64,000 bases of DNA from positions 144,375 through 208,374 of the IMG/VR virus record IMGVR_UViG_3300029945_000001; one strand, written 5' to 3'. The position numbers and the translations under genes were made by a program. The notes under the pieces were generated by a model that did not search any database, was not told where the DNA came from, and saw only the letters and a program-made list of their open reading frames with translations. Shown here in pieces: positions 3,480-62,702 of this stretch (within the stretch, counting starts at the first letter, position 1; each line of letters starts with the position of its first letter).

Positions 3480-3983
3480 ATGACTAAGACCGCTGAAGTT
3501 ACCACCAAGGAAGTCACCATCAAGGAAGTCACCACCAAACCCCGTTATGTGGAGCTGGCTGAAAAGCTGACTGAGCTCGCCAAGGCTGGTGACAAGAGCA
3601 CTGTCGTTGCCTGGGGTGCCGCCGCTCCCATCGTCGAAGCTGTGACCGGGACCGATGCCGGCATGTTCAAGCAGGTCAATGACACCATCGGCGACCTCTC
3701 GAATGCCGCTATCACCATGGCCGGCACCGGACTTATTCCCAAGATCGAAGAAGCCAAGAAGGACGGTATCGATCCGTCTGAATTGACCTATCGTGCACGC
3801 ATCGCCATTCCGGGCGGATCTGTTGCTGCGATCGTTCGTGCCGAATCGACCTCGCGCAATCCTCGCACTGGCGAAACGAAAGCTGTCTATGGCCGGGCAG
3901 CCGTCGAAGTCAACTTCGATGCCGCCATCGACAAGGACAATGTGGCTTCATTCTCGAATCGTATCGCCACGCTCCTGGGTTAA
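3480..3983 (+). CDS. Divergent HU/IHF-like DNA-binding protein with N-terminal extension
   Basis: IAIPGGSVAAIVRAESTSRNPRTGETKAV aligns to the HU arm ([30 protein letters not shown]); GC-rich codon use; RBS ggag. Confidence 0.6.
   Translation: MTKTAEVTTKEVTIKEVTTKPRYVELAEKLTELAKAGDKSTVVAWGAAAPIVEAVTGTDAGMFKQVNDTIGDLSNAAITMAGTGLIPKIEEAKKDGIDPSELTYRARIAIPGGSVAAIVRAESTSRNPRTGETKAVYGRAAVEVNFDAAIDKDNVASFSNRIATLLG
3495..3539 (+). repeat. 3 x 15-bp in-frame tandem repeat (EVTTK/EVTIK/EVTTK)
   Basis: gaagttaccaccaag gaagtcaccatcaag gaagtcaccaccaaa. Confidence 0.9.
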
Positions 3984-9665: not shown

Positions 9666-11987
9666 TTAAGCCTGGGGATCAGTCTCATCGATTTCAGCAT
9701 CGGCATTAACTAAGGCCTGACCGACACCATCGACACCTGAAGTCAGAACGCCATCGTTGCCAACCAGAGGATTGTTGTTCACCTGGATGGATTCAGACAA
9801 CATCAGCTTCAGAATGGCATCGAGACCCTTAACGCTGATGATCATGCCGATCGGGTTCGTCGGGTAGACGACCTCACGGCTGTTGGCGACAGCGCGCTGA
9901 GTCACGGCCATGGCGTTGTTGAACGTGAACTTGCCGGCGAAGATGCCACGGTCCAGATTCTTGCCAAAGCTGATGACGCTTTCCGGGTCAGCATCGCGAA
10001 CCGGGACGATGAGCATCAGACCTTCAAAGTTCTTGTACGACGTGGCGACGCAGTCGATGCGTGAGCCGTTCGGAAGATAGAAGCTGTAGTCTGCCGACGG
10101 AGCTTCTTCGACGCGAGTGTCGTTCAGTTCGTTGAAGTAGGTTTTGATGGCCAGCAGGGTTGCAATGATCGTCGGGGTGGTGACCAGACGATACACAGCC
10201 TTTTCGCCAGGGTTCAGCTGGTTCAGGTACAGCGAGGTCAGCTGCGAGTCGGCGATGATCGCATTCAGACGATTCATAACCAGCGAATGCATGTCCGAGT
10301 TACGCTCGGTTTCACGCATAACGACGGCATTGGAAACGTCCAGAACACCACGCCAGACATTCGGGTTACACAGAGTGCCGGCCAGGAAGTCCTGAGCCAC
10401 CGAATTGTACCAGTCGATGAGGGGATCGGTTTCCTCGTGCTTCAGGCGATTGTAGACGTTGTTCAGGCACTCGCCGATCATGCGAACGGCCTTGGCATCA
10501 TTGCCCAGCGACATGATATCATTGAGGATCTTGATGATGTCTTCGGCCGACTTGCCTTCAGTGTCCTTGATGCTGTATTCGGCGGTGTACATGCGAGACA
10601 CGGGAATATAGAAGGACTGCTCCTTCTGTGTCACGCGAGCCGAAATATTCGCCTTGCGCATATTTTCTTCGCTGTACTGGGCGAAGGGTTCGAAAGCGAA
10701 CAGCGAGAAGGACAGCTTGTTGTAAGCAGTATTCACGGCATCCGCAACGGTCGTGCCGGCGGCAGGGAAAAGCTGGGCGTTCAAGCTACCATAGCCTGTC
10801 GAGGCGCCGGTCTTGAGGTTAAGCTTCATGGTGAAGTTGAGATCGATTTCGGCACCGGCGTCACCAAGAACAGACAACAACGATGACGCAGTGCCCGCAG
10901 CGGTAACAGCAGTCGAAGGAATGACACGCTGGATACGAGGAGCTGCTTCACGATCGGCCGAGTCGTTCGTGTTGGTGCGCTGCACCAGACGCGAGGCTGC
11001 CTGATATTCGGTACGAACAGGGATATATTCCGTGGTCGTGCCGTCGGTGACGGCGATCCAGACTTCGCGAACATAGGCGCCTTCGCCGATGATGTCAGTC
11101 CAGTTCAGATTGTCGTAGCCGACGGTGTTGGAGCTGACGCCGAGCTTGAACATGTTGAACGGCACGCCGACCTTAACCAAGTTCTGGTGAACCAGGACAG
11201 GGTTGGTCGAATCGTCGTTTTCCATGAACAGTTCGACACGTTTGGCGGTGGTGTCGACGAACGAAGGATCGCGCATCAGCCGGATCAGAGGAGTGCGAAT
11301 GGCGTTCGAATAGCGAATATCGGCGTTCGGGTTCTGCGAAGCAGCCAGATCGTAAACATCGCCATTGGCGATCTTGGTGACGACGACGGTTTCTTCGGTA
11401 GCGATGCGCGGCAGGATACGATCGATCAGCGACTTGAAGACGCGCAGCATGGTCAGCGAGATCGACAGACGAACATCGGTGACGACGCTATCGATGCCTT
11501 CACCGAACGACTCGCCGGCAGCGATATCGTTAGTGACAGCATTGACACCACCATTGCCGAACAGCGAGCCCAGAGCGATGCATTCGGTTCCGGCAACGCC
11601 GCCCTTGGCATCAGCAAAGTTGGCATTGGTCGAATGCAGATGCCCCATGACACCAAGCGTAGCAGCTTCGATGGCCGCCGCAATGCGAGGATTGGTACGA
11701 TCCAGACGATTGTTCTGGGTCGAGCCGCTCATCGATTCGATGGTACCGATGACGAAGTTTTCAACGGCGGCCAGGTCGATGCGCTCTTCAGCGCCACGAA
11801 TGACGGTCATCGGCTTGTCGAAATATTCCAGGCCGGCAGCATTGGTGACCGAAGCAACCAATGAATTCGAACTCAGAAATGATTCTGTCGCCGCAGCCAG
11901 AGTGAACGCAGCACCCAGAGACAGACCGCTGTTCTGGGCAACACCACGCAGCTGCTGCTTCCATGAATTAAGTTTGCTCATTGTCAA
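9666..11987 (-). CDS. Major capsid protein precursor (phiKZ gp120-like)
   Basis: 773 aa, strongly GC-biased codons, candidate A/S/G-x-E head-protease sites (AATE-SF, AAGE-SF), divergent from DnaB with one intervening gene as in phiKZ gp118-120. Confidence 0.8.
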   Translation of the reverse strand: MTMSKLNSWKQQLRGVAQNSGLSLGAAFTLAAATESFLSSNSLVASVTNAAGLEYFDKPMTVIRGAEERIDLAAVENFVIGTIESMSGSTQNNRLDRTNPRIAAAIEAATLGVMGHLHSTNANFADAKGGVAGTECIALGSLFGNGGVNAVTNDIAAGESFGEGIDSVVTDVRLSISLTMLRVFKSLIDRILPRIATEETVVVTKIANGDVYDLAASQNPNADIRYSNAIRTPLIRLMRDPSFVDTTAKRVELFMENDDSTNPVLVHQNLVKVGVPFNMFKLGVSSNTVGYDNLNWTDIIGEGAYVREVWIAVTDGTTTEYIPVRTEYQAASRLVQRTNTNDSADREAAPRIQRVIPSTAVTAAGTASSLLSVLGDAGAEIDLNFTMKLNLKTGASTGYGSLNAQLFPAAGTTVADAVNTAYNKLSFSLFAFEPFAQYSEENMRKANISARVTQKEQSFYIPVSRMYTAEYSIKDTEGKSAEDIIKILNDIMSLGNDAKAVRMIGECLNNVYNRLKHEETDPLIDWYNSVAQDFLAGTLCNPNVWRGVLDVSNAVVMRETERNSDMHSLVMNRLNAIIADSQLTSLYLNQLNPGEKAVYRLVTTPTIIATLLAIKTYFNELNDTRVEEAPSADYSFYLPNGSRIDCVATSYKNFEGLMLIVPVRDADPESVISFGKNLDRGIFAGKFTFNNAMAVTQRAVANSREVVYPTNPIGMIISVKGLDAILKLMLSESIQVNNNPLVGNDGVLTSGVDGVGQALVNADAEIDETDPQA

Positions 11988-17686: not shown

Positions 17687-17792
17687 ATTTGAAATAAAAA
17701 ATACATATATATTAATATGTAGAGAAGACTGGTTAAGAACGCGTCTTGATCAGTCTATTCTCTAAAATCCGTTAAAATTGGGAATTAAATAA

Positions 17793-19088
17793 ATGCACTT
17801 TGATATTTCCACGCTGACTGCTGACGCTTTGACTTCTGCTACCATGATTGGTACTCTTGTTTCGGAGTCCGCAGCCCCCCTCATCGACTGGGACAGCATG
17901 CGCAAGGAGATCGAATCCTGGCCGCTGGTCTCGGAGGTGCCGCAGGACAAGGACGTTCCGCAGCTGAACATGACTTCGATCACCGGCAAGACCTGCCGTG
18001 AGCTGGTCAAGGGCGGCATCAAGACCGAGAATTTCATCGCCATCATCAAGTCGATGCTGAATGTCCGCGCCCATGTCATGTCCTCGAACGCCGGCAAGGC
18101 CCAGACTCTTTATCCGACCGTGAACGAATATGGCGCCCGTGAAGTCGGCAATGTCATCGTCGTCGCCAACAAGCATGCCGGCAAGCCCCGGTCGATCAAC
18201 ATCAATCGCCAGGCTTATGACCATCCGAAGAATGCCAATGACGAGACCCGTGGTCGTCAGCGGCACGTCAGCTGCGTCGTCGAAGTCGGTGGCTATATCG
18301 GTTTCGCTTTCTACAACAAGTTCTCTCCGAACACCCTGATCCAGACTTTCTTCCAGGTCACGCATGTCATTCCGCTCGGCGGCGACAGCAAGCTGTTCGA
18401 AATCGGCATGACCCTGGTTCATGCGGCGTTCGCTTCGGCCGCCGACGGCAAGGTCCTGGCCACTCCTCTGGAAGATGATACTCCGCTGGCCAATCTGATC
18501 GATGCGATGCAGCGTCGTTTGGCCGTCGGTGCTCTTCAACTGGATTGGCCGCTGTACAGTCAGATCTTCGTTCCGCATTTCGGCCTGAAGAATGACACCG
18601 CCGCCGGCATCGCCAAGATCGATCATTGGAAGGATCTGCACTCCGACACCGTGACTGCCAATCTCGACAAGCCGGTCAGTGCCGACATCACCGACATTGA
18701 AATCGATCTGATGCACAATCTGGTCGAAGCGCGTGCCACCTCCACGCCGAAGACCGACGGCGATGGCAATGCCGTCTATGATGAAACTGCTCTGGTCATC
18801 AGCCATCACATGGACGACACCGGCAATACCATCCGTGCGATGATGACCCTGATCAACAACAACGAAACCATCTGGACCGGCGTCACCGACATCACGGCCA
18901 ACAACTTCGATCGTCCGGTCGGTGATGACATCACCTATCCGAGCGGCAAGTTGAAGGCGGCGGTTCTCGATCCGGCCCTGATTCTCGGCGCCACCACGTT
19001 CCAGCGTCTGAAGACCGACGTCATCAATCGTCAGGTCGAAGGAAAGCATCCTGTGGAGAACCCGACCATCCTGGGCATTCTGCGTTAA
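17793..19088 (+). CDS. Hypothetical, probably highly expressed 431-aa protein
   Basis: GC-rich codon use like MCP and chimallin, AT-rich flanks, strong terminator downstream; no recognised motif. Confidence 0.75.
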   Translation: MHFDISTLTADALTSATMIGTLVSESAAPLIDWDSMRKEIESWPLVSEVPQDKDVPQLNMTSITGKTCRELVKGGIKTENFIAIIKSMLNVRAHVMSSNAGKAQTLYPTVNEYGAREVGNVIVVANKHAGKPRSININRQAYDHPKNANDETRGRQRHVSCVVEVGGYIGFAFYNKFSPNTLIQTFFQVTHVIPLGGDSKLFEIGMTLVHAAFASAADGKVLATPLEDDTPLANLIDAMQRRLAVGALQLDWPLYSQIFVPHFGLKNDTAAGIAKIDHWKDLHSDTVTANLDKPVSADITDIEIDLMHNLVEARATSTPKTDGDGNAVYDETALVISHHMDDTGNTIRAMMTLINNNETIWTGVTDITANNFDRPVGDDITYPSGKLKAAVLDPALILGATTFQRLKTDVINRQVEGKHPVENPTILGILR

Positions 19089-19107
19089 GCAGAAAACCAA
19101 CTAAAGT

Positions 19108-24361: not shown

Positions 24362-24373
24362 ACAATATAGATA

Positions 24374-24402
24374 ACAGAAGAGAGGCTAAGCCTCTCTTCT
24401 GT
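24374..24402. terminator. Bidirectional terminator hairpin
   Basis: acagaagagaggc-taa-gcctctcttctgt between convergent operons. Confidence 0.75.
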
Positions 24403-24407
24403 TGTCA

Positions 24408-24791: not shown

Positions 24792-25301
24792 CTATTTATA
24801 CCAGTAAGCATTGCTAGACGAACTATTACCAGAATCAAATGCATTTATATACCATACATCATTATACCCAAGAAGACTCATTTTATTGTTTTTTGCTAAT
24901 ACATATGTAGTATTATCATTGATAGAAAATGTATTGGTTGGTGCACAATTCAAGACAATAGCATCTGTAGTCATATTTAAAAATTCAATATTGAAGTAAT
25001 TTGTTAGTGAACTTATATCTGGTAGAACAATAAATTTAGTACCATTTAAAAGACATCTAGAATTATTGTTTGTATTGTCTACTTCTAATATCGGTATTGT
25101 TACTTCATCAACAACGAGCGATTGAGGAGCCCATAATGCAGTCTGAGCATCTCCAGATTGTATACATGTCCAAAATATACCACTATTTTTATCATAACAA
25201 ATATCTGGAGGAGATCCATTAAACGATACTTCTCCAGCTAAAATACCATTAGGGTTTTTAGGTACTAAAAAACAAGTTACAGCAGATAGATCGCTTGACA
25301 T
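24792..25301 (-). CDS. Tail-fibre-associated protein, related module
   Basis: FIVLPDIS..FNIEFLN..IVLNC..NTFSIND..MSLLGYNDVWY resembles the neighbouring module. Confidence 0.5.
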   Translation of the reverse strand: MSSDLSAVTCFLVPKNPNGILAGEVSFNGSPPDICYDKNSGIFWTCIQSGDAQTALWAPQSLVVDEVTIPILEVDNTNNNSRCLLNGTKFIVLPDISSLTNYFNIEFLNMTTDAIVLNCAPTNTFSINDNTTYVLAKNNKMSLLGYNDVWYINAFDSGNSSSSNAYWYK

Positions 25302-25304
25302 GAA

Positions 25305-25940
25305 TTATGTATTCCCCTGATCTATAGTTGTATTAATAGCATCAAATGGCGCCATCAAATCTAACGTAACTAATTCATCAAAGTTGTTATTATTACATAA
25401 TGTTTCTATCTGATTTGAAAGATCAAATTGTGTTTTATAAATTGTTTGAATACACTGATTAATGAATGTGGTAATTGATGTTATATCTGAAACTTCTAGT
25501 GCTATACGACCACACCAATAGATGGGAGAAGCGATAGTACCATTTGTTAATTGAGATAATAGAGAATTCAAATCGTTATTTAGAATACTAATATTAACAC
25601 CGTTATAAATAACAGATTTACTAAGTGCAGTATCTCTGTTTGCTTTAGCGATATTTGATAATGTAGTTAATAGTTCAGTATAAGCTTTAGGTGTTGCCGT
25701 ATATGTGATATCTGGACCATTTCTGTTTTCAACAACATCGTAATACGTAATATCAGGAAGAGTATCATGATAGTTAATATCAACAAATCCATTTAATGTT
25801 CTAAAATCAGGATTGGATATCATAGATCCATGATACTGAAATCCATTTAACGTAAAGAATGCGCCATCACTAAAGTATTCATTTAAAACAGGGTGATAAT
25901 ATTTTTCGGTATCTAAGAAACCTGTTGTCTGACTTGTCAT
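25305..25940 (-). CDS. Putative tail-fibre assembly/chaperone protein
   Basis: Position in the fibre cluster; C-terminal half AKANRDTALSKSVIYNG...IYW resembles DUF4376-type assembly proteins. Confidence 0.4.
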   Translation of the reverse strand: MTSQTTGFLDTEKYYHPVLNEYFSDGAFFTLNGFQYHGSMISNPDFRTLNGFVDINYHDTLPDITYYDVVENRNGPDITYTATPKAYTELLTTLSNIAKANRDTALSKSVIYNGVNISILNNDLNSLLSQLTNGTIASPIYWCGRIALEVSDITSITTFINQCIQTIYKTQFDLSNQIETLCNNNNFDELVTLDLMAPFDAINTTIDQGNT

Positions 25941-25976
25941 CTTTAGTTTTCCTTGTATGTGTTTGCTTTATTAAAA

Positions 25977-26135
25977 CTATTTAGTGAGACCTAAAATAAG
26001 CCCAGTTCCTGTTATGGTAGCATAACTTATGCCCACAATACAATTACCGGCAGCACCGCCACCAGATCCAGAATTTCCAAGACCGTCGTCAGTACCACGA
26101 GATCCAGCCTGACCGAAATCGCTCCATCCGCCAGC
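25977..26135 (-). pseudogene. Orphan C-terminal remnant of a second gp38-like glycine-rich adhesin
   Basis: Manual translation: AGGWSDFGQAGSRGTDDGLGNSGSGGGAAGNCIVGISYATITGTGLILGLTK*. Aligns with the end of 26309-27034 (GGPPGYAITGISNVTWIAKGTILGPTQ*). No own start or RBS. Confidence 0.75.
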
Positions 26136-26296
26136 TAAGACGCTTCCGCCTGCCGGCGTTGCTGAAGGCGAGCCGACATTTCCGACAAGACTTCGGGATG
26201 AGCCAGGATGTAGTGGTGCACGGCGGCATCGAAGCCGTATTTGCCCAGCACCAGGCCCATCGATGCCGCTGCAATAAGGTGAAAACGTGATTTCAT
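26135..26296 (-). pseudogene. 53-aa truncated DsbA-family-like N-terminus (signal/anchor plus YILAHPEVL helix)
   Basis: RBS aggaga overlaps the adhesin stop; MKSRFHLIAAASMGLVLGKYGFDAAVHHYILAHPEVLSEMSARLQQRRQAEAS*; GC-rich; no thioredoxin CxxC domain follows. Confidence 0.6.
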
Positions 26297-26308
26297 TTCA
26301 AATTTCTC

Positions 26309-27034
26309 CTACTGCGTCGGGCCAAGGATCGTGCCCTTAGCTATCCAAGTCACATTTGAAATGCCGGTGATCGCATAACCGGGCGGGCCACCGTTCCCGC
26401 CGCCGTTGTATGATCCGACAGACCCGTTTTGGCCGTACGCACCGGGGGCTCCCCCAGCACCACTGGAACCAGCACCAGAGGTGCCGCCGCCCTGAGCGCC
26501 GCCACCTACCGACAGGGTTCCTGAATTGCCGGCGCCGTTATATCCGTTTGACGGACTCCATCCGGGAACTGCCCCTGCGCCGCCGCCACCGTTGCCGCCC
26601 CAGCCATAAGTCGTGTATTCACATCCGCCACCGCCACCACCACCACCGCCACTCTGGATCGTGCCTAAATTTGTGATTGTGATTTTCTGCAAGGTGGAAA
26701 TGGCAGGGCCACCGCTGCCACCGCTACCGCCACCGCCATCACCACCACCGCCACCGCCGCCCTGGCCGCCGGCACCTACAATATAAGCACCAACCATTAC
26801 ATTAAGAGAAATATTAGAACTAGCAGGAAAACTATTGATAGTTAGTGCATACGTACTTGTTGATATCGATCCGATAATTGCAGATGAAGCAATATTTAAT
26901 TTGACATTAATAGGATTTTTACCATTCCAACCATAATTAGTAGTAAGATCAGTATTTAATACGTAATTATAAATAGTTCCAGATAAATTTATTACTACTG
27001 ATTGTACAGAGCTGGCAGGATTGAGTATAAACAT
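26309..27034 (-). CDS. T2/T6 gp38-like glycine-rich receptor-binding adhesin
   Basis: beta-rich N-terminus then GAGGQGGGGG / ITNLGTIQSGGGGGGGG polyglycine repeats and a terminal GYAITG..VTWI..GTILG motif. Confidence 0.8.
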   Translation of the reverse strand: MFILNPASSVQSVVINLSGTIYNYVLNTDLTTNYGWNGKNPINVKLNIASSAIIGSISTSTYALTINSFPASSNISLNVMVGAYIVGAGGQGGGGGGGDGGGGSGGSGGPAISTLQKITITNLGTIQSGGGGGGGGGCEYTTYGWGGNGGGGAGAVPGWSPSNGYNGAGNSGTLSVGGGAQGGGTSGAGSSGAGGAPGAYGQNGSVGSYNGGGNGGPPGYAITGISNVTWIAKGTILGPTQ

Positions 27035-27036
27035 AG

Positions 27037-27087
27037 TTAATAAACTTTTTTGTTTGAATAGAATTCTAATCTATTTAAAATATACAT
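27037..27087 (-). other. 16-codon upstream ORF carrying the strong RBS (aggagga), out of frame with the adhesin
   Basis: MYILNRLEFYSNKKVY* stops 2 nt before ATG 27034; contains an A6 run at 27046-27051. Confidence 0.6.
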
Positions 27088-27114
27088 AATGATTCCTCCT
27101 AATAGAAATACAGA

Positions 27115-27123
27115 TCATATAAT
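27115..27123 (-). promoter_or_regulatory. Putative late promoter ATTATATGA
   Basis: TATG core as in phiKZ late promoters; same 9-mer at 37610, 58085 and 60600, all intergenic. Confidence 0.45.
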
Positions 27124-27131
27124 GGATTTAA

Positions 27132-27164
27132 AGATAGGAGAAGGCGCGATACCTTCTCCTATCT
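27132..27164 (-). terminator. Terminator hairpin
   Basis: agataggagaagg-cgcgata-ccttctcctatct. Confidence 0.7.
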
Positions 27165-27177
27165 CATATCAGTTGTC

Positions 27178-27698
27178 TTAAGAACCCCAGATATTCCGTC
27201 TATTTTCAGGAAGATTATCTCTATCAATATAAACAGGAATATATCCAGTTTTCATTTCAAAAGCAAGAACAAAAGGAACAATATAAGAAGTATAATTCAT
27301 TTCACAATTTTGATCAAAGAGTTCACCGTATAACGACATACAAGAACCAGTACAAATACCAACAACAGGACATGATTTACAATTATCTCTTTGAGACCAG
27401 TGAGTAATTGCATCTAATTTAACATTAGTAATATCAGTAATAGATCCACGTTGTGTGATTTTCCATTTAAAGCAATATCAAGACTGCTAGCATTAGGGCA
27501 AGAAATAATATTACCTGACATATCAACAGCTAAATAAAAAGCACTATTCATATTACAGAAATTATAACTGGTTATCTGACTTTCATCAAATAGAACATAT
27601 GTTTTATCTCTGATGAAACTAATGATATTGCCAAGATTAAAATTAGCATAACTTTTATCGTTTGTCCAATCGAGTGTTTTTTTGAGTATCTTAGTTAT
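27178..27698 (-). pseudogene. Radical SAM/SPASM protein C-terminal remnant, 5' deleted and frameshifted
   Basis: Manual translation: NFCNMNSAFYLAVDMSGNIISCPN...NGKSHNV [-1 shift near 27447] GSITDITNVKLDAITHWSQRDNCKSCPVVGICTGSCMSLYGELFDQNCE...RNIWGS*. CxxCx5Cx3C SPASM motif; no start codon. Confidence 0.8.
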
Positions 27699-27750
27699 TT
27701 AAATTAGCAGCAATATTTACCATAGTAATTGTTCCTGTATTTTCTGCCAC
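27691..27750 (-). pseudogene. 19-aa N-terminal stub of a small tail-tip gene
   Basis: RBS aggaga, GTG start, MAENTGTITMVNIAANLNN*; resembles MAL..SGAISMS.I..EL starts that follow chaperone-bearing fibres. Confidence 0.4.
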
Positions 27751-27818
27751 AGTATATGTCTCCTGTGTCTCTATGGTTGATACTATATATAATTTATTCT
27801 ATACGATAAATTGTAAAA

Positions 27819-27858
27819 GTTAAGGATAGGATGAGCCTAGGCTCATCCTATCCTTAAC
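27819..27858 (-). terminator. Perfect 40-bp palindrome/terminator
   Basis: gttaaggataggatgagcct|aggctcatcctatccttaac. Confidence 0.7.
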
Positions 27859-27871
27859 CACATAAAATAAA

Positions 27872-29062
27872 TCATTTATTTTCTATAATTGACAATCGTC
27901 TATCTATATCTTTTATTGCTTCTACAATAATACCCATCATATTTCCATAAGCAACACTTAATGTATCATTATTATTAATGACAACTTCTGGTAAAACCTT
28001 TTGAATATCCTGGGCAATAAGACCAGACTGGCGTTCTCCAGTATCTATACGAGTGTATGTATATCCAGTCAATTGTTTAATCTTACTGATAGAATCCTCA
28101 ATAACTTTTAAATCTTTCTTTAATTTAATATCAGAATATGCAGTAAGATTTGCCAGTGCCACTAAGTTACCAGAAGTATCAATAGTCATTAGTGCATTTC
28201 CAGCATCGGTATTGTCCATAATTCTGAAATAGCCATTACTAGCATCAATAAATTTATCAGCCGGTGTTGTTCCAGTACCAACAACCCGAATAGAATTAAA
28301 TGGAGTATTGGAATTTGCACTCACATTAGATGTATAATCTTCTAATGTAGTATTTAATACTGTCGTTGATACATATTCGGAAAGATCAATGTTTGCTAAA
28401 GCTGTAGCTAATGCAGTATTCGTTACATAGTTCTGTAAAGTTGCTGTTAGTATTTTATTTGTTACATAATCAGTTAAATATGTACTAATATTATCAGACA
28501 TGACATAATCGCCAGCAGGGCTATATTCAGCCAATATTTTATTTAATGCATCTAAAGTGACATAATCCAATAATGTAGTATCAAGATCGGTGATTTTTTC
28601 ATAACTATTTAAATCTTGTATAATCTGAGCAATACTGCTATCAACTGATTGTTCGAATGTAACAAGTTCGTTTGTTAAATCTGATTGTCCAGTACCAACT
28701 GTCTGTGTAATCTCTGATAGAGCTGTTGTGATAGCAGCATTCACAAACCTGGTATTGGCAGCGCCAGATGAATTATTATCAGTAGCAAGATCTGGAACAT
28801 TACAACTTTCTGTAAAGGTAGCATTGGTTGTATCGGCTTTCGAATTTAAAATATTGAAAAGATTAATATAATCATTTATATTACATAATGTTTTTAAATT
28901 GGCATAAAGTGTAACACCATCACCTATTTTAATGATACCCGTGCTACTATCTATAGTAATTAGACCATATGGAATAGGAACTGATGTATTATTCCAATCT
29001 GCTTGTGTGGCATTTAATCTTTGAAAAATACCTTGAATAACTATGGGTGTTGACATAGACAT
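27872..29062 (-). CDS. Tail fibre with Mtd_N/hyaluronidase-type N-terminus and Peptidase_S74 intramolecular chaperone
   Basis: N-terminal T.ADW...PIPYGLITID...KIGDGVTLY..L; LxDYVT repeats; C-terminal YSDIKLKKDL...IKQLTGYTY...GLIAQDIQKVLPE...VAYGNM...VEAIKD. Confidence 0.88.
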   Translation of the reverse strand: MSMSTPIVIQGIFQRLNATQADWNNTSVPIPYGLITIDSSTGIIKIGDGVTLYANLKTLCNINDYINLFNILNSKADTTNATFTESCNVPDLATDNNSSGAANTRFVNAAITTALSEITQTVGTGQSDLTNELVTFEQSVDSSIAQIIQDLNSYEKITDLDTTLLDYVTLDALNKILAEYSPAGDYVMSDNISTYLTDYVTNKILTATLQNYVTNTALATALANIDLSEYVSTTVLNTTLEDYTSNVSANSNTPFNSIRVVGTGTTPADKFIDASNGYFRIMDNTDAGNALMTIDTSGNLVALANLTAYSDIKLKKDLKVIEDSISKIKQLTGYTYTRIDTGERQSGLIAQDIQKVLPEVVINNNDTLSVAYGNMMGIIVEAIKDIDRRLSIIENK

Positions 29063-37814: not shown

Positions 37815-39401
37815 ATGTCTAGTGTTTCCGGTTTTGGTACTCAGGAAAGCGATTCTCCCAAGGCTCCGCAGGGCGAAAAGCAGGCTCCTGGTTTCAGCAA
37901 TTCTCAGCAGGAAAAGAAGCGTTCTCTCCTGCACAGTTCATTGTCCGAATTTGACAGCTTCTCGACGCAGTCCCCGCAGCTATCGAAGTTCGTCGAGCGT
38001 ATGGAAAAGGAAATCCCCGGCGCCAAGGTCGTTCGCATCCCTGAGCCGTCCAACACTCTGGCGGTGATGGTCGACAACATGTTCTATGTTCTGCTGTTCC
38101 CCGACATGGGCGTTCAGTTCGGAACTCTTGAATTCAAGCGCAAGGCGTTCATCGCTTATTTCCCGAGCGTTCGCAAGCGCCTCGAAGCTGATTTCGCGAA
38201 TTGCACCATCATTCAGAATGCCATCGTCATTCCCGAAGACTACCAGAACGAAACTCGCGTCGGCGCCATCATCGCCCATCTGCGGTCTACGTTCTCGGCG
38301 AACAAGCCTGGCAATCTGGATGTCTACGGGTCGATCAGCTTCTTCAAGGGTTCGACCTTGACGATCTCGACGTCGTTGGCTGAAGTCCACAACTACTACG
38401 ATCGCCATTGGCCGTTCGTGACCAAGCCGCGTTTCGACTACGGCATCGTTGTCAGCTCTCCTGTTCGTGACGAACTGTCGGTCTCCAACAACGAACCGAC
38501 GGAACCGAAACAGCTGTTCGTCGTCGGCGGCTACACCAGCTTCGTTCGGACCAATCCTCCGAACAACTCATTGGCTCGCGAAAAGCTTCCGCATGTTCTG
38601 GCTCCGATCGTGCACATTTCTTCTGTGTTCTCGATCATGCCGATCAATGCCTTCGCTCCTCTCGCCATCGGCCTGGGTGGGTCGAAGTTCCTCTATGATG
38701 GTCTGTGGCTGTCGCCTTATACTTCATTCGAAAGCGGAAAGCCGAACCTCGGCCGCCTGATGCCGGATGTTCTGGACAACAGCCGCAATGAACTGATGTC
38801 GTGCGACAACATGGACGACGTTAAGCAGTTCGTCCAGATCGCCTGCTTGACTCCTGTTCTGGCTATCGATAACATCCCTGGCGTTCCGACGCTGTCCATG
38901 CTCAAGCTGTTCATGGACGATGGCAACAACAAGCGGGTCATCGATGCCTTCAGTGACTTTATGGGCAAGCCGTATGATGGCAATAGCGACATCTTTTCGG
39001 TCGCTTCGACGGTCATCACCGGCATCGTCAACTACCCTGACAGCCCGACCGATAGTCGCGTCGTCGACTATATGTCACTGGTCAGCGGTAAGGGATATCC
39101 TGCTGAGGAAATCTCGAACCTGCTGGACGTCTATGAGAACCAGCATTACCAGGCTTCGATTGTCGCCAAGCATTCGAAGTTCATTCCGCTGTCGTACAAC
39201 ATTGTCAGCATCCTGAAGCCGTCTTTTGTGCAGGCCCTGGTCAATGCTATCAACAACGGCGTGACCATCAAGCAGTCCAACAGCAATACCAGCAGCAGTA
39301 ACACCAACTGGCTGATCGATATGGCCAAGGGCTATAGCGAGGCTCGTCTGAGCATGGGTGCCAATACTGTCGAAGGTGGTCTCGGCGGCATGTACCTGTA
39401 A
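37815..39401 (+). CDS. chmA: Putative chimallin (major phage-nucleus shell protein)
   Basis: Immediately upstream of the nvRNAP beta-prime N-terminal subunit gene, as phiKZ gp54-gp55; strongest GC codon bias class; disordered N-terminus; own terminator. Assigned by synteny, not alignment. Confidence 0.72.
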   Translation: MSSVSGFGTQESDSPKAPQGEKQAPGFSNSQQEKKRSLLHSSLSEFDSFSTQSPQLSKFVERMEKEIPGAKVVRIPEPSNTLAVMVDNMFYVLLFPDMGVQFGTLEFKRKAFIAYFPSVRKRLEADFANCTIIQNAIVIPEDYQNETRVGAIIAHLRSTFSANKPGNLDVYGSISFFKGSTLTISTSLAEVHNYYDRHWPFVTKPRFDYGIVVSSPVRDELSVSNNEPTEPKQLFVVGGYTSFVRTNPPNNSLAREKLPHVLAPIVHISSVFSIMPINAFAPLAIGLGGSKFLYDGLWLSPYTSFESGKPNLGRLMPDVLDNSRNELMSCDNMDDVKQFVQIACLTPVLAIDNIPGVPTLSMLKLFMDDGNNKRVIDAFSDFMGKPYDGNSDIFSVASTVITGIVNYPDSPTDSRVVDYMSLVSGKGYPAEEISNLLDVYENQHYQASIVAKHSKFIPLSYNIVSILKPSFVQALVNAINNGVTIKQSNSNTSSSNTNWLIDMAKGYSEARLSMGANTVEGGLGGMYL

Positions 39402-45190: not shown

Positions 45191-45820
45191 ATGTCTGACC
45201 AAAAAAGCTATGAGCAGAAGCCCTTCGAGCCGAAGCCTTACGATTTTTCTCGCCTGGTCAATCTGCGAGGATCGGATAACAAGGATGCTTCTCTGAATAT
45301 TGGCGTCTATAACGGCAACGCATCCTTGGCCGTCATGGTCAAGAATGTTCAGGGCGGTCCTGTGTTCAAGTGGAATCTGAGCCGCAATGCCATGGTGGTT
45401 CTGCGCAGCAAGTTTCGTAAGCTGCTGGTAGAGCAGCATCCCGAGACCCACGAGACGATCAATCTCACGATTTATGATGACAAAGAAAAGAAATTCATGC
45501 CCAACGGGTGTGTTGTCATCGGTCGGAATGACAAGAACGTCTGTTATATCGCTGTTAATGGCCAGAAGGCTGAGCGGTTGCGGTTCAACATTCGGGCCAG
45601 TCTGAACTTTGAACTTCAAACTCCTATGGATGAAGTCGGCCGTTCAAACATCGGTGTCGAAACCATCATCGAACAGCTTGGTGCCGACATTCCTTATGCT
45701 GTTCTTCTGACCAGCTATAAGCGCGAATTCGCCGGCCAGGGCGGTCGCCCCAATAATAATACTGGTGGTAGTGGTGGTTATCAGAAGAGTGTTCCTCAGG
45801 AAGATATCTTCGGCGGCTGA
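45191..45820 (+). CDS. chmC: ChmC-like nucleus-associated nucleic-acid-binding protein (Whirly-type fold) with disordered tail
   Basis: Two beta4-alpha units, G/N-rich tail (GQGGRPNNNTGGSGGY), GC-leaning codons, directly upstream of the sigma-like nvRNAP subunit. Confidence 0.6.
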   Translation: MSDQKSYEQKPFEPKPYDFSRLVNLRGSDNKDASLNIGVYNGNASLAVMVKNVQGGPVFKWNLSRNAMVVLRSKFRKLLVEQHPETHETINLTIYDDKEKKFMPNGCVVIGRNDKNVCYIAVNGQKAERLRFNIRASLNFELQTPMDEVGRSNIGVETIIEQLGADIPYAVLLTSYKREFAGQGGRPNNNTGGSGGYQKSVPQEDIFGG

Positions 45821-61178: not shown

Positions 61179-62702
61179 ATGACTTATGCTCAGCGTATTG
61201 GCCAAGATCTGGCCTTTGTTGGTTCGGGTGTTTTCCAGAATTTCGGCATCGAGCAGCTGGCTGTCGATCCCTCACCGATCACCAAGGTGAGTGTGTGGTA
61301 TAATACCACATCGAACACCCTGAACTTCTCTTCGATCAATACTTCCGGCGCCTTCGTCATCAATCAGGTCAGCGACGTCGCCTCGGCGGTTTCGGCTCTG
61401 TCGGCCGAGACTGCGGCCCGTGAAGCCGATGTCGCCACCCTGACGGCCAAGCTTAATCAGGCCATCAACGGTCTGTCCTGGAAGTATGCCGTCGAGGTTA
61501 TGCTGGATGGTACTGACACCGCCGTGGCACTGACTGGTCTTTATACCATTCAGGGCTATGCCATCCAGGAAGGCGATCGCATCGCCGTCAATGTCGATAC
61601 TCCGGCCGGTTGGCAGGGTAACGGTATCTATATCGCTACAGCGGCCGGCGCCTGGTCACGCTCTACTGACATGAACGAAACCACTCCGCTGGACGAGTTC
61701 ACCGACGCGACATTCTACGTCGAAAATGGCACATACGGCGGCAAGCCGTACACACAGGTCAACCAGGTCAATGTCGTCGGTACCGACGCTGTCGCGTTCA
61801 CGCAGTCGAATGGTGCCAATAGCCTGGACCAGGGCTATGGTATCGTGATCGTCGGCAACACCATCGCCGTGGTTGGTGACAACTCCACCATCATCGTCGA
61901 TTCGACTGGCGTTCATGTTGCCCAGGCTTATACCGATGGCATCAACTCCACCATCTCTAGTGCTGTCTCGAACGAGCAGACACAGCGCACTCTGGCTATC
62001 CAGGGATTGCAGACCCAGATCAACACGGCCGACGGCAACATCTCCGCATTGCTGACCAGTGTCGGCGACAGTTCAACTTTGCAGACAACTGCGAAGAATC
62101 TGTCGGGCGCCATCAATGAAGTGTTGGGCAACATCAATTCGTTGTCGAGCACTGTTACCGGCAATATCCAGACTGCGATCAACGGCATCGAAACTCAGAT
62201 CGGCACCGTCGCCAGTCTGACAACGACGGCGAATAACTTGGTCGGCGCCATCAACGAAGTCAAGGCCAGTGTTGCGACACTGTCGACTTCTGTTTCTGGA
62301 GATCTTCAGACGGCTATCGATAACGTGCAGTCTGGTCTGACTCAGGAAATCCAGGACCGGGGAACAGCGATCACCAACCTGTCCAACACTCTGGCTCAGG
62401 ATATCGCTGCTGAAGCGGCCGCTCGTGATGCCGACATCAACGGCCTGGTCAGCGCCATCAACTCACAGCGTTATAACTACGCTTCGACGGTTGCGGCCTC
62501 GTCCTACACCGTCAACCACAATTTGAACACTGGCAATATCCAGGTGACCATCCGTGGCGACATGGGCAATGGCGTGTTCGACAACATCCTGCTTCCCTGG
62601 CATGTTGTTGATGCCAACAACATCTACATCGGCGACATCGGCTCTGCGATGAATGTCATCGTGTCGATCACTGCCAATGATCCGATCACGGTCACTCCGT
62701 AA
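61179..62702 (+). CDS. Abundant tail-fibre/collar-like virion protein
   Basis: GLSWKYAV..LTGLYTIQG..GDRI..NGIYIA..AWSRSTD domain, coiled-coil LxTTAxNLxGAINEV repeats, YTVNHNL C-terminal module; GC-rich codons. Confidence 0.75.
   Translation: MTYAQRIGQDLAFVGSGVFQNFGIEQLAVDPSPITKVSVWYNTTSNTLNFSSINTSGAFVINQVSDVASAVSALSAETAAREADVATLTAKLNQAINGLSWKYAVEVMLDGTDTAVALTGLYTIQGYAIQEGDRIAVNVDTPAGWQGNGIYIATAAGAWSRSTDMNETTPLDEFTDATFYVENGTYGGKPYTQVNQVNVVGTDAVAFTQSNGANSLDQGYGIVIVGNTIAVVGDNSTIIVDSTGVHVAQAYTDGINSTISSAVSNEQTQRTLAIQGLQTQINTADGNISALLTSVGDSSTLQTTAKNLSGAINEVLGNINSLSSTVTGNIQTAINGIETQIGTVASLTTTANNLVGAINEVKASVATLSTSVSGDLQTAIDNVQSGLTQEIQDRGTAITNLSNTLAQDIAAEAAARDADINGLVSAINSQRYNYASTVAASSYTVNHNLNTGNIQVTIRGDMGNGVFDNILLPWHVVDANNIYIGDIGSAMNVIVSITANDPITVTP

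What the first reader, a model, noticed from the sequence alone, without database searches (positions are those of the whole stretch)
25977..26800. Adhesin tip-swap scar: new GC-rich C-terminus, DsbA-like hitchhiker and stranded old C-terminus
Seen: the gp38-like adhesin has an AT-rich 5' third and a GC-rich 3' part. Its stop overlaps an RBS driving a 53-aa GC-rich ORF (26135-26296) that looks like the start of an alphaproteobacterial DsbA-type protein (YILAHPEVL helix) but is cut off. Right after, in another frame, is a startless second adhesin C-terminus (25977-26135) ending ...GLILGLTK*. Inference: a donor fragment (adhesin 3' end plus the start of its next gene) recombined into the resident adhesin, probably via glycine-codon repeats, and displaced the original receptor-binding end. 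The old end may remain a silent cassette for host-range switching, and the stub hints at the donor and host.
Basis: partly seen in the sequence, partly recalled or inferred. Interest (0 to 1): 0.75.

Follow-up and report, generated by a model that had tools for sequence, protein, structure and literature searches.

The report
Phage adhesin tip swap with scar
An uncultured peat jumbo phage replaced the receptor-binding half of its tail-fibre adhesin with foreign GC-rich DNA, and the join still shows a cut-off bacterial gene start and the stranded old adhesin end; this is a clear natural example of a known way phages change host range.

Summary
The locus lies on the minus strand of an AT-rich (about 29% GC) PhiKZ-type jumbo phage from peat. 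The 241-aa protein (26309-27034) is a true gp38-type adhesin by sequence and by predicted fold. Its synonymous codon usage switches after codon 87 (26774|26773). That point is the boundary between the attachment domain and the glycine-rich specificity domain. The 53-aa ORF (26135-26296) is the signal anchor plus N-terminal helix of an alphaproteobacterial ScsC/DsbA-like protein. It is cut at the end of that helix, and no thioredoxin domain exists anywhere in the phage. The startless frame 25977-26138 is a gp38-family C-terminus in the phage's own AT-type codons, still in its native place before the next gene.

Best reading: about 634 bp of GC-rich donor DNA replaced most of the resident specificity domain. 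The left crossover was in the first glycine-rich motif; the right join was illegitimate.

The arrangement is identical in more than 24 contigs from many peat samples. No donor, ancestral allele or relative was found. The "silent cassette" idea has no support.

Caveat: about a dozen whole genes of this phage, including the capsid protein and PhuZ, share the GC-rich codon dialect. GC-richness alone therefore does not prove foreign origin here.

The parts
27872..29062 (-). Tail-fibre gene (396 aa) with a C-terminal intramolecular chaperone domain. It is the upstream neighbour in the same-strand tail-fibre block.
   Evidence: Pfam Peptidase_S74 50.2 bits. Many PHROG tail-fibre families, best E 2.8e-34.
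26774..27034 (-). Adhesin codons 1-87: resident N-terminal attachment domain in the AT-type codon dialect.
   Evidence: GC3 0.07-0.27 and mean synonymous LLR -1.46. Folded beta/alpha domain with pLDDT about 97. Aligns with the N-terminal domain of environmental gp38 homologues.
26309..26773 (-). Adhesin codons 88-241 plus the TAG stop: the imported glycine-rich specificity (receptor-binding) domain in the GC-type dialect. The left crossover lies in the first glycine-rich motif (YIVG|AGGQGG), at about 26773/26774.
   Evidence: GC3 0.40-0.73 and mean LLR +0.64. Gly codons are GGC 33, GGT 23, GGA 6, GGG 4, against GGT/GGA in resident genes. The profile matches S16 gp38 6f45_D at E 2.9e-8. The AF2 model matches PP01 and S16 gp38 with probability 1.0 and TM 0.59-0.72.
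26297..26308 (-). 12-nt spacer. Together with the adhesin stop it forms TAGGAG, a ribosome-binding site for the stub ORF. It probably came in with the donor DNA.
   Evidence: Sequence read directly.
26135..26296 (-). Hitchhiker stub: 53 codons plus TAG. It holds the signal anchor and N-terminal helix of an alphaproteobacterial-type ScsC/DsbA-like protein. It is cut at the end of that helix, and the stop codon is supplied by resident sequence at the join (about 26140).
   Evidence: Pfam ScsC_N 43.6 bits, E 2.3e-11. PDB 7rgv_A residues 11-40. About 60% identity over residues 22-53 to Mesorhizobium and other alphaproteobacterial homologues, which continue into a CPYC thioredoxin domain. No Thioredoxin_4 domain in the 208-kb record of the phage. 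GC3 0.65.
25977..26138 (-). Stranded old adhesin C-terminus: the last 53 codons plus the native TAG stop. It is startless, out of frame with the stub and adhesin, and uses the resident AT-type dialect. It sits 36 nt before the next gene.
   Evidence: Profile hit E 5.5e-5 to the C-terminal end of the family model. 17.6 bits against a maximum of 10.4 in 2000 shuffles. GC3 0.28, LLR -0.73. No ORF of 30 aa or more in this frame.
25305..25940 (-). Next resident gene (211 aa, unknown function) with its own ribosome-binding site. Genes of 169 aa and 124 aa follow it.
   Evidence: ORF list. No family hit. Only identical copies in the databases.
24373..24403 (-). Hairpin terminator that closes the minus-strand block after the 124-aa gene.
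   Evidence: Terminator scan: 14-pair stem.

Best explanation
This is the scar of a specificity-domain swap in a gp38-type tail-fibre adhesin.

The resident gene was in the AT-rich dialect. It encoded an N-terminal attachment domain and a glycine-rich receptor-binding domain ending ...GLILGLTK.

A GC-rich donor molecule carried three things: a homologous adhesin 3' part, a 12-nt spacer with a ribosome-binding site, and the first 53 codons or so of a ScsC/DsbA-like gene. It recombined with the phage in two places.
- The left crossover fell in the DNA of the first conserved glycine-rich motif, probably helped by homology.
- The right join was illegitimate. It fused ScsC codon 53 to the resident adhesin 53 codons before its stop.

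About 634 bp (roughly 26140-26773) thus replaced most of the old specificity domain.

The result is a chimeric adhesin. It keeps the attachment domain matched to the phage's own fibre and displays a new receptor-binding domain, which probably meant a change of receptor or host.

The ScsC stub and the old end are by-products. The stub may be translated into a 53-aa membrane-anchored peptide. The old end is untranslated.

Shown: the anatomy, the homologies, the codon-usage step, the truncation, and that the arrangement is fixed across samples. Inferred: a single event, the crossover mechanism, the change of specificity, and an alphaproteobacterial-type donor.
For: - The adhesin belongs to the gp38 family by Pfam, by profile against PDB (S16 gp38, E 2.9e-8) and by fold.
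- The codon-usage change point after codon 87 coincides with the attachment/specificity domain boundary and with the motif YIVGAGGxGG, the best-conserved motif of the family.
- Among ORFs of the 104.6-kb contig, the adhesin is the clearest case holding long segments of both dialects.
- The stub is a significant ScsC_N match. It aligns to full-length alphaproteobacterial homologues up to its last residue, and these then continue into a CPYC thioredoxin domain that the phage lacks.
- The exact 9-mer YILAHPEVL occurs in 45 loci of the species-representative genomes, and most of those titles are Alphaproteobacteria.
- ScsC_N was found in Caulobacter only among the 14 control genomes.
- The old end is a significant gp38 C-terminus in resident codons. 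It sits in the native position before the next gene.
- gp38-family genes occur in 8 of 401 sampled alphaproteobacterial genomes, in loci of 51-74% GC, so a plausible donor pool exists.
- Both joins are covered by contigs from three independent peat runs. The arrangement is identical (one mismatch in 8250 bases at most) in the two contigs compared. The adhesin, the neighbouring 211-aa gene and the old-end fragment are each 100% identical at protein level in all the other copies found.
- Published work shows that gp38 has an N-terminal attachment domain and a C-terminal specificity domain, and that natural and laboratory exchanges occur in or near the conserved glycine-rich motifs (PMC3157838, citing Tetart et al. 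1998).
Against: - No donor sequence and no ancestral allele (N-terminal domain joined to a domain ending GLILGLTK) was found in any collection searched. All hits for the adhesin's neighbours are identical copies of this phage.
- The direction and the single-step nature of the event are therefore inferred.
- The GC-rich dialect of adhesin codons 88-241 resembles that of the phage's own GC-class genes. GC-richness alone therefore does not mark foreign DNA in this genome.
- None of the gp38-family loci examined has a ScsC-like gene next to it.
- The assemblies are contigs, which drop rare variants.
Confidence: 0.8

Rival explanations
1. In-place origin. The GC-rich 3' part of the adhesin was recoded inside this phage by the same force that made its other GC-dialect genes (codon selection toward a GC-rich host's tRNA pool). 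The old end would then be a leftover of a local tandem duplication, and the ScsC stub a separate capture.
For: - About a dozen whole genes, including the capsid protein and PhuZ, share a dialect that avoids A at four-fold sites (A 1-7%). Adhesin codons 88-241 are similar: A 14, C 43, G 15, T 29%.
- The phage's tRNAs read A/U-ending codons, which suggests a GC-richer host.
- There is a precedent for codon selection in highly expressed genes of a low-GC phage in a high-GC host (PMC4324244).
Against: - Selection on expression should act on a whole gene, not stop at codon 87.
- An adhesin is a low-copy virion protein.
- The GC-rich tract runs on through a truncated gene of cellular type that has no reason to be codon-optimised.
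- The two C-termini share only about 48% identity over 21 residues, so they are not a recent duplication.
Confidence: 0.08
2. Programmed switch. The old end is kept as a silent alternative cassette that can be recombined back to change host range, as in Mu/P1 invertible tail-fibre segments, shufflons or diversity-generating retroelements.
For: Two homologous adhesin 3' ends lie 170 bp apart on the same strand. They share an in-phase 8-nt identity, GGATGGAG, encoding G-W-S.
Against: - There are no inverted repeats flanking the ends, and no direct repeats beyond glycine-codon repeats.
- No Resolvase, Phage_integrase or RVT_1 match exists in the 208-kb, 91%-complete record.
- No alternative joint appears in contigs of four runs, apart from cross-hits of other organisms to the (GGN)n tract.
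- The fragment carries only the last 53 residues, so it lacks most of the variable loops of a specificity domain.
Confidence: 0.04
3. Artefact or chance. The mosaic is an assembly chimera between an AT-rich phage and GC-rich DNA, and the 'old end' is a chance glycine-rich frame.
For: Metagenome origin. The glycine-rich low-complexity tract attracts cross-hits from many organisms.
Against: - The arrangement is identical (one mismatch in 8250 bases at most) in the two contigs compared (ENA and JGI). The adhesin protein is carried by more than 24 contigs in the ENA, JGI and Logan collections, from many samples.
- Both joins are spanned by contigs in three runs.
- The join is in frame, and the chimeric protein gives a confident gp38-like model with pLDDT 89.7.
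- No shuffle of the old fragment reaches its score (0 of 2000).
Confidence: 0.02
4. The stub is a functional gene kept by selection, for example a membrane-anchored copy of the ScsC trimerisation helix that interferes with the host's periplasmic disulfide isomerase. It would then not be a neutral hitchhiker.
For: - The ORF is intact, with a good ribosome-binding site and start.
- It retains about 60% identity to cellular homologues over the helix.
- ScsC_N is described as the N-terminal domain of trimeric ScsC (name of the Pfam family; 7rgv match).
Against: - There are no diverged relatives, so conservation cannot be measured.
- The stop codon is created by the join itself.
- No transcript contig covers the stub in the one RNA run laid.
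Confidence: 0.06

Closest known systems
Specificity-domain exchange in T-even gp38 adhesins (T2/T6/K3/S16/PP01 type; Tetart et al. 1998; Trojet et al. 2011, PMC3157838)
   Same: - The protein family and fold are the same.
- The two-domain logic is the same: the N-terminal attachment domain is kept and the C-terminal glycine-rich specificity domain is exchanged.
- The crossover lies in or near a conserved glycine-rich motif.
   Different: - The carrier is a PhiKZ-type, PhuZ-encoding jumbo phage of about 29% GC from peat, not a T4-like phage.
- The donor differs strongly in composition.
- Only the left crossover is in homologous sequence. The right one is illegitimate.
- Because of that, a truncated cellular-type gene and the old 3' end remain as a visible scar.
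Homology-facilitated illegitimate recombination (one homologous anchor, one illegitimate join; described for natural transformation; recalled from general knowledge, not tested here)
   Same: There is one crossover in shared sequence, one join without homology, and foreign flanking DNA comes in along with the selected part.
   Different: It was described for bacterial transformation. Here it is only inferred for a phage-by-(pro)phage or phage-by-host exchange, and neither parent is known.
Invertible tail-fibre segments and shufflons (Mu G/Gin, P1 C/Cin) and diversity-generating retroelements
   Same: More than one adhesin 3' end lies at a single locus.
   Different: There are no inverted repeats, no recombinase, no reverse transcriptase and no population variation. 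The second end is a dead remnant.
Mycobacteriophage Patience (PMC4324244): a low-GC phage in a high-GC host with imported higher-GC genes and host-like codons in highly expressed genes
   Same: A low-GC phage carries higher-GC segments. Both import and codon selection were proposed.
   Different: The contrast here is far stronger (GC3 about 0.17 against 0.55-0.71). One segment starts inside a gene and carries a datable scar.

Membership tests
gp38 tail-fibre adhesin (Pfam PF05268; T2/S16/PP01 type) | Sequence match to the family model above the curated cut-off | tested here: met
   28.8 bits against a cut-off of 25. The profile of the protein with 15 homologues hits S16 gp38 (6f45_D) at E 2.9e-8 and PP01 gp38 (9v85) at E 4e-4.
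gp38 tail-fibre adhesin (Pfam PF05268; T2/S16/PP01 type) | Two-domain fold: an N-terminal attachment domain plus a polyglycine-rich sandwich | tested here: met
   AF2 model with pLDDT 89.7 and pTM 0.86. Foldseek matches 9v85_C (E 8.8e-14, TM 0.67/0.72) and 6f45_D (E 4.4e-9, TM 0.59), both with probability 1.0.
gp38 tail-fibre adhesin (Pfam PF05268; T2/S16/PP01 type) | Conserved glycine-rich motifs separated by variable segments, and a conserved C-terminal motif | tested here: met
   The alignment of 16 sequences has invariant Gly columns in blocks, variable stretches between them, and a shared ...G(N/I)xN(I/V)TW..GT.LG end.
gp38 tail-fibre adhesin (Pfam PF05268; T2/S16/PP01 type) | Gene placed directly after the distal tail-fibre gene whose tip it caps | tested here: inconclusive
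   A tail-fibre gene lies upstream on the same strand. It is separated by a hairpin and about 840 bp of small ORFs, and it carries its own S74 chaperone domain. The partner fibre is not identified.
gp38 tail-fibre adhesin (Pfam PF05268; T2/S16/PP01 type) | Binds the fibre tip and a host surface receptor | not testable with these tools
   The host is unknown and no binding assay is possible.
ScsC / DsbA-like periplasmic thiol-disulfide oxidoreductase | N-terminal ScsC_N helix after a signal sequence | tested here: met
   43.6 bits against a cut-off of 25.8. 7rgv_A residues 11-40. About 60% identity to alphaproteobacterial homologues.
ScsC / DsbA-like periplasmic thiol-disulfide oxidoreductase | Thioredoxin-fold catalytic domain with a CxxC motif | tested here: not met
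   The ORF stops at residue 53. Homologues continue for about 200 residues, including CPYC. No Thioredoxin_4 match occurs in the 208-kb record of the phage. It is a truncated remnant, not a working member.
Programmed tail-fibre switching (Gin/Cin-type inversion, shufflon, DGR) | Repeats that flank the alternative ends (inverted for invertases; template/variable repeat pair for DGRs) | tested here: not met
   Only glycine-codon repeats and short chance matches were found.
Programmed tail-fibre switching (Gin/Cin-type inversion, shufflon, DGR) | Site-specific recombinase or reverse transcriptase encoded by the element | tested here: not met
   No Resolvase, Phage_integrase or RVT_1 match in the 91%-complete 208-kb record. 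The controls rang.
Programmed tail-fibre switching (Gin/Cin-type inversion, shufflon, DGR) | Both arrangements present in a population | tested here: inconclusive
   No alternative joints appear in contigs of four runs. Contigs drop rare variants, and no raw reads were available.

The most novel reading that the evidence does not exclude
The scar is direct evidence that a very AT-rich, nucleus-forming-type (PhuZ-encoding) jumbo phage imports functional modules from GC-rich alphaproteobacterial (pro)phage or host DNA. On this reading, the same import route, rather than in-place codon selection, produced its other GC-dialect genes such as the capsid protein and PhuZ. That would give a genome that runs on two codon dialects. 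A second unexcluded reading is that the 53-aa ScsC helix peptide is expressed and acts on the host's periplasmic disulfide isomerase.
Probability: 0.15. Interest if true: 0.7.

Novelty: new member of a known kind. Interest (0 to 1): 0.45.

Why it matters
Adhesin domain swaps are the main way T4-like phages change host range, but they are usually inferred from clean mosaics. Here the join kept its debris: a cut-off cellular gene and the old 3' end.

That debris gives the direction of the event, the approximate limits of the imported piece (about 634 bp) and a hint of the donor (an alphaproteobacterial-type genome). This is useful because the phage is an uncultured peat jumbo phage with no known host and no known relatives.

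The locus also extends the gp38 exchange logic to a PhiKZ-type phage. It offers a concrete handle on the question of why this genome holds two very different codon dialects.

Tried and rejected
Donor searches, none successful:
- Stub peptides against species-representative genomes found no relative.
- The stub against 1.8 billion representative proteins found no true homologue.
- tblastn of the stub and the adhesin against GenBank phages gave no match. The low-complexity filter probably masks the glycine tract.
- blastn of 25000-28000 against phages gave no match.
- The YILAHPEVL pattern and a looser pattern in IMG/VR found only this phage or chance hits.

Ancestral-allele and relative searches:
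- Queries were the old fragment, the adhesin, the 211-aa neighbour and the capsid protein.
- They returned only 100% identical copies of the same phage.

Neighbourhood checks:
- No ScsC-like gene lies next to the gp38 homologues examined.
- No gp38-like gene lies next to alphaproteobacterial ScsC genes.

Other points:
- Domain-wise best hits differ between the N- and C-terminal halves. All are distant (30-50% identity) and inflated by glycine, so I give this no weight.
- Stop-codon recoding is rejected. TAA, TGA and TAG are all common stops, ORFs of 100 aa or more cover 86% of the genome, and there is no suppressor tRNA.
- My guess that the small ORFs at 27178-27560 are a broken radical-SAM/SPASM gene got no Pfam support.
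- The GC-rich 528-aa protein could not be identified.

Full report
**Setting**

The window is part of a 104.6-kb viral contig. The same phage is assembled as contigs of up to about 229 kb elsewhere. It encodes a PhiKZ-type major capsid protein and a PhuZ tubulin. It has six tRNAs that read A/U-ending codons. No integrase, resolvase or reverse transcriptase was found in a 91%-complete 208-kb record. All runs that hold it are peat metagenomes. Background GC is about 29%, and GC3 is about 0.17.

**The observation**

- Adhesin. The 241-aa ORF 26309-27034 is a gp38-family protein. It scores 28.8 bits on Pfam. It scores 152 bits against a profile of environmental homologues built without it. The family profile hits S16 gp38 at E 2.9e-8. 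The AlphaFold model (pLDDT 89.7) matches PP01 and S16 gp38 with probability 1.0.
- Codon switch. Codon usage switches after codon 87, at window 26774|26773. GC3 goes from 0.07-0.27 to 0.40-0.73. The synonymous-codon log-likelihood ratio goes from -1.46 to +0.64. The switch lies in YIVG|AGGQGG. This is the first glycine-rich motif and the boundary between the attachment domain and the glycine-rich specificity domain.
- Stub. The adhesin stop forms TAGGAG, 9 nt before the ATG of a 53-aa ORF (26135-26296). That ORF is a clear ScsC_N match (43.6 bits, E 2.3e-11). Its best solved relative is 7rgv_A, residues 11-40.
- Old end. The frame 25977-26138 has no usable start and reads ...GNCIVGISYATITGTGLILGLTK*. 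It is the only other hit to the gp38 profile in the six-frame translation of the contig (E 5.5e-5), and it aligns to the very end of the model. It scores 17.6 bits, against a maximum of 10.4 in 2000 shuffles. Its codons are of the resident type, with GC3 0.28.

**The stub is a truncated cellular-type gene**

The nine-residue peptide YILAHPEVL was sought in one genome per prokaryote species and found at 45 loci. Most are Alphaproteobacteria, such as Mesorhizobium, Sphingomonas, Novosphingobium, other Hyphomicrobiales and Rhodobacteraceae. These genes align with stub residues 22-53 at about 60% identity, right up to its last residue (RRQAEAS against RQREAEAA). They then continue for about 200 residues, through a CPYC thioredoxin domain.

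The phage has no thioredoxin domain anywhere. It has no second gp38 gene either. The stub's TAG is supplied by the resident sequence TTAGCT at the join, which places the right junction near 26140.

**It is not an artefact**

The two contigs compared (ENA and JGI) are identical to the window over about 8-9 kb, with one mismatch at most. The exact adhesin protein is carried by more than 24 contigs in the ENA, JGI and Logan collections. The IMG/VR copies encode the adhesin, the 211-aa neighbour and the old fragment at 100% protein identity. Contigs from three independent runs span each junction without mismatch. No alternative joints were seen, apart from cross-hits of other organisms to the (GGN)n tract. 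These are contigs, so rare variants cannot be excluded.

**Mechanism**

The simplest account is one recombination event with a GC-rich donor. That donor carried a homologous adhesin gene followed, 12 nt later, by a ScsC-like gene.
- The left exchange was in the conserved glycine-motif DNA.
- The right join was illegitimate, inside ScsC codon 53 or 54 on one side and 53 codons before the resident stop on the other.

This replaced most of the resident specificity domain. It left the old end, its native stop and its native spacing to the next gene (36 nt) untouched.

The account matches what is known for T-even gp38. The N-terminal domain fits the phage's own fibre, the C-terminal domain sets receptor specificity, and exchanges occur in or near the glycine-rich motifs (PMC3157838).

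The functional consequence, a new receptor specificity, is inferred. gp38-family genes do occur in alphaproteobacterial genomes: 8 of 401 sampled, in loci of 51-74% GC. A donor pool of the right composition therefore exists. None of those examined has a ScsC neighbour, and none is close (35-40% identity).

**What is not supported**

The suggestion that the old end is a silent cassette finds no support.
- There are no flanking repeats.
- There is no recombinase or reverse transcriptase.
- There is no population variation in contigs.
- Only 53 residues are retained.

**An important caveat: two codon dialects**

GC-richness is not unique to this locus. In the 208-kb record, most of 189 ORFs have GC3 of 0.10-0.30. 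About a dozen whole genes have GC3 of 0.5-0.71. They include the capsid protein and PhuZ.

These genes avoid A at four-fold sites (1-7%) but keep T (22-36%). Most have their own hairpin terminator. Together with the phage's tRNA set, this looks like an extreme form of the codon selection described for mycobacteriophage Patience. That phage is a low-GC phage in a high-GC host which also imported higher-GC genes (PMC4324244).

The glycine-rich part of the adhesin has a similar dialect. The case for import here therefore rests on three things rather than on GC content alone:
- the step inside the gene;
- the continuation of the GC-rich tract through a truncated cellular-type gene;
- the stranded homologous end.

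Among ORFs of the contig, the adhesin is the clearest intragenic mosaic.

**Limits**

No donor, no ancestral allele and no relative of the phage could be found in any collection. The refutation test "relatives carry the same arrangement as intact genes" could therefore not be run.

**Verdict**

The feature is real and well explained. It is a new and unusually legible example of a known kind of event, in an unusual carrier.

Noticed in passing
whole contig and the 208-kb record G001; in the window 3480-3983(+), 9666-11987(-), 17793-19088(+), 37815-39401(+), 45191-45820(+), 61179-62702(+): The genome holds two codon dialects. Most genes have GC3 of about 0.10-0.30, but about a dozen whole genes have GC3 of 0.5-0.71. 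These include the PhiKZ-type capsid protein and PhuZ (at G001 106637-107689). They almost lack A at four-fold sites (1-7%) while keeping T (22-36%), and most have their own GC-rich hairpin terminator. The contrast is far stronger than in mycobacteriophage Patience. Whether selection or import caused it is unresolved.
   Followed up: partly
contig C1 13096-17919 (outside the window; window coordinates about -22300 to -17500): There are six phage tRNA genes: Ser-UGA, Leu-UAA, Lys-UUU, Met-CAU, Thr-UGU and Asn-GUU. Apart from Met-CAU, they read codons ending in A, or in U/C for Asn. This suggests a host that decodes the phage's AT-rich codons poorly.
   Followed up: partly
window 3415, 39514, 45893, 53918, 58164 and others (16 sites on the contig): The motif ATATATATTAC(T) recurs about 16 times, 15 of them on the plus strand, mostly just upstream of gene starts. 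It is probably a phage promoter.
   Followed up: no
window 27178-27560 (-): Three small ORFs in shifting frames lie between the fibre gene and the adhesin. One piece is Cys-rich (...CKSCPVVGICTGSC...). This looks like another broken gene in the same locus, but Pfam gave no hit.
   Followed up: partly
window 27819-27858 and 27037-27087 (-): A perfect 40-nt palindrome lies directly after the tail-fibre gene. A 16-codon ORF with a strong AGGAGG site ends 2 nt before the adhesin ATG, which itself lacks a visible ribosome-binding site. This suggests translational coupling.
   Followed up: no
window 17772-19100: In this GC-rich island both strands show long ORFs. The minus-strand 442-aa ORF reads like antisense noise. 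The plus-strand 431-aa ORF (17793-19088), preceded by a near-match of the promoter-like motif (TATATATTA, 17706) and followed by a terminator, is the likely gene.
   Followed up: partly
contig C1, window coordinates -31756 to -30204 (outside the window): Two adjacent lipoprotein-like genes have signal peptides with a Cys and intermediate GC (0.46-0.49). One is a mosaic of the two codon dialects. They may be host-derived accessory genes.
   Followed up: no
L111, L119, L122 (one alphaproteobacterial genome, contig C40, 5690-10763): Three gp38-family genes lie in tandem on one strand within 5 kb of a sampled alphaproteobacterial genome. This may be a multi-adhesin array in a prophage.
   Followed up: no
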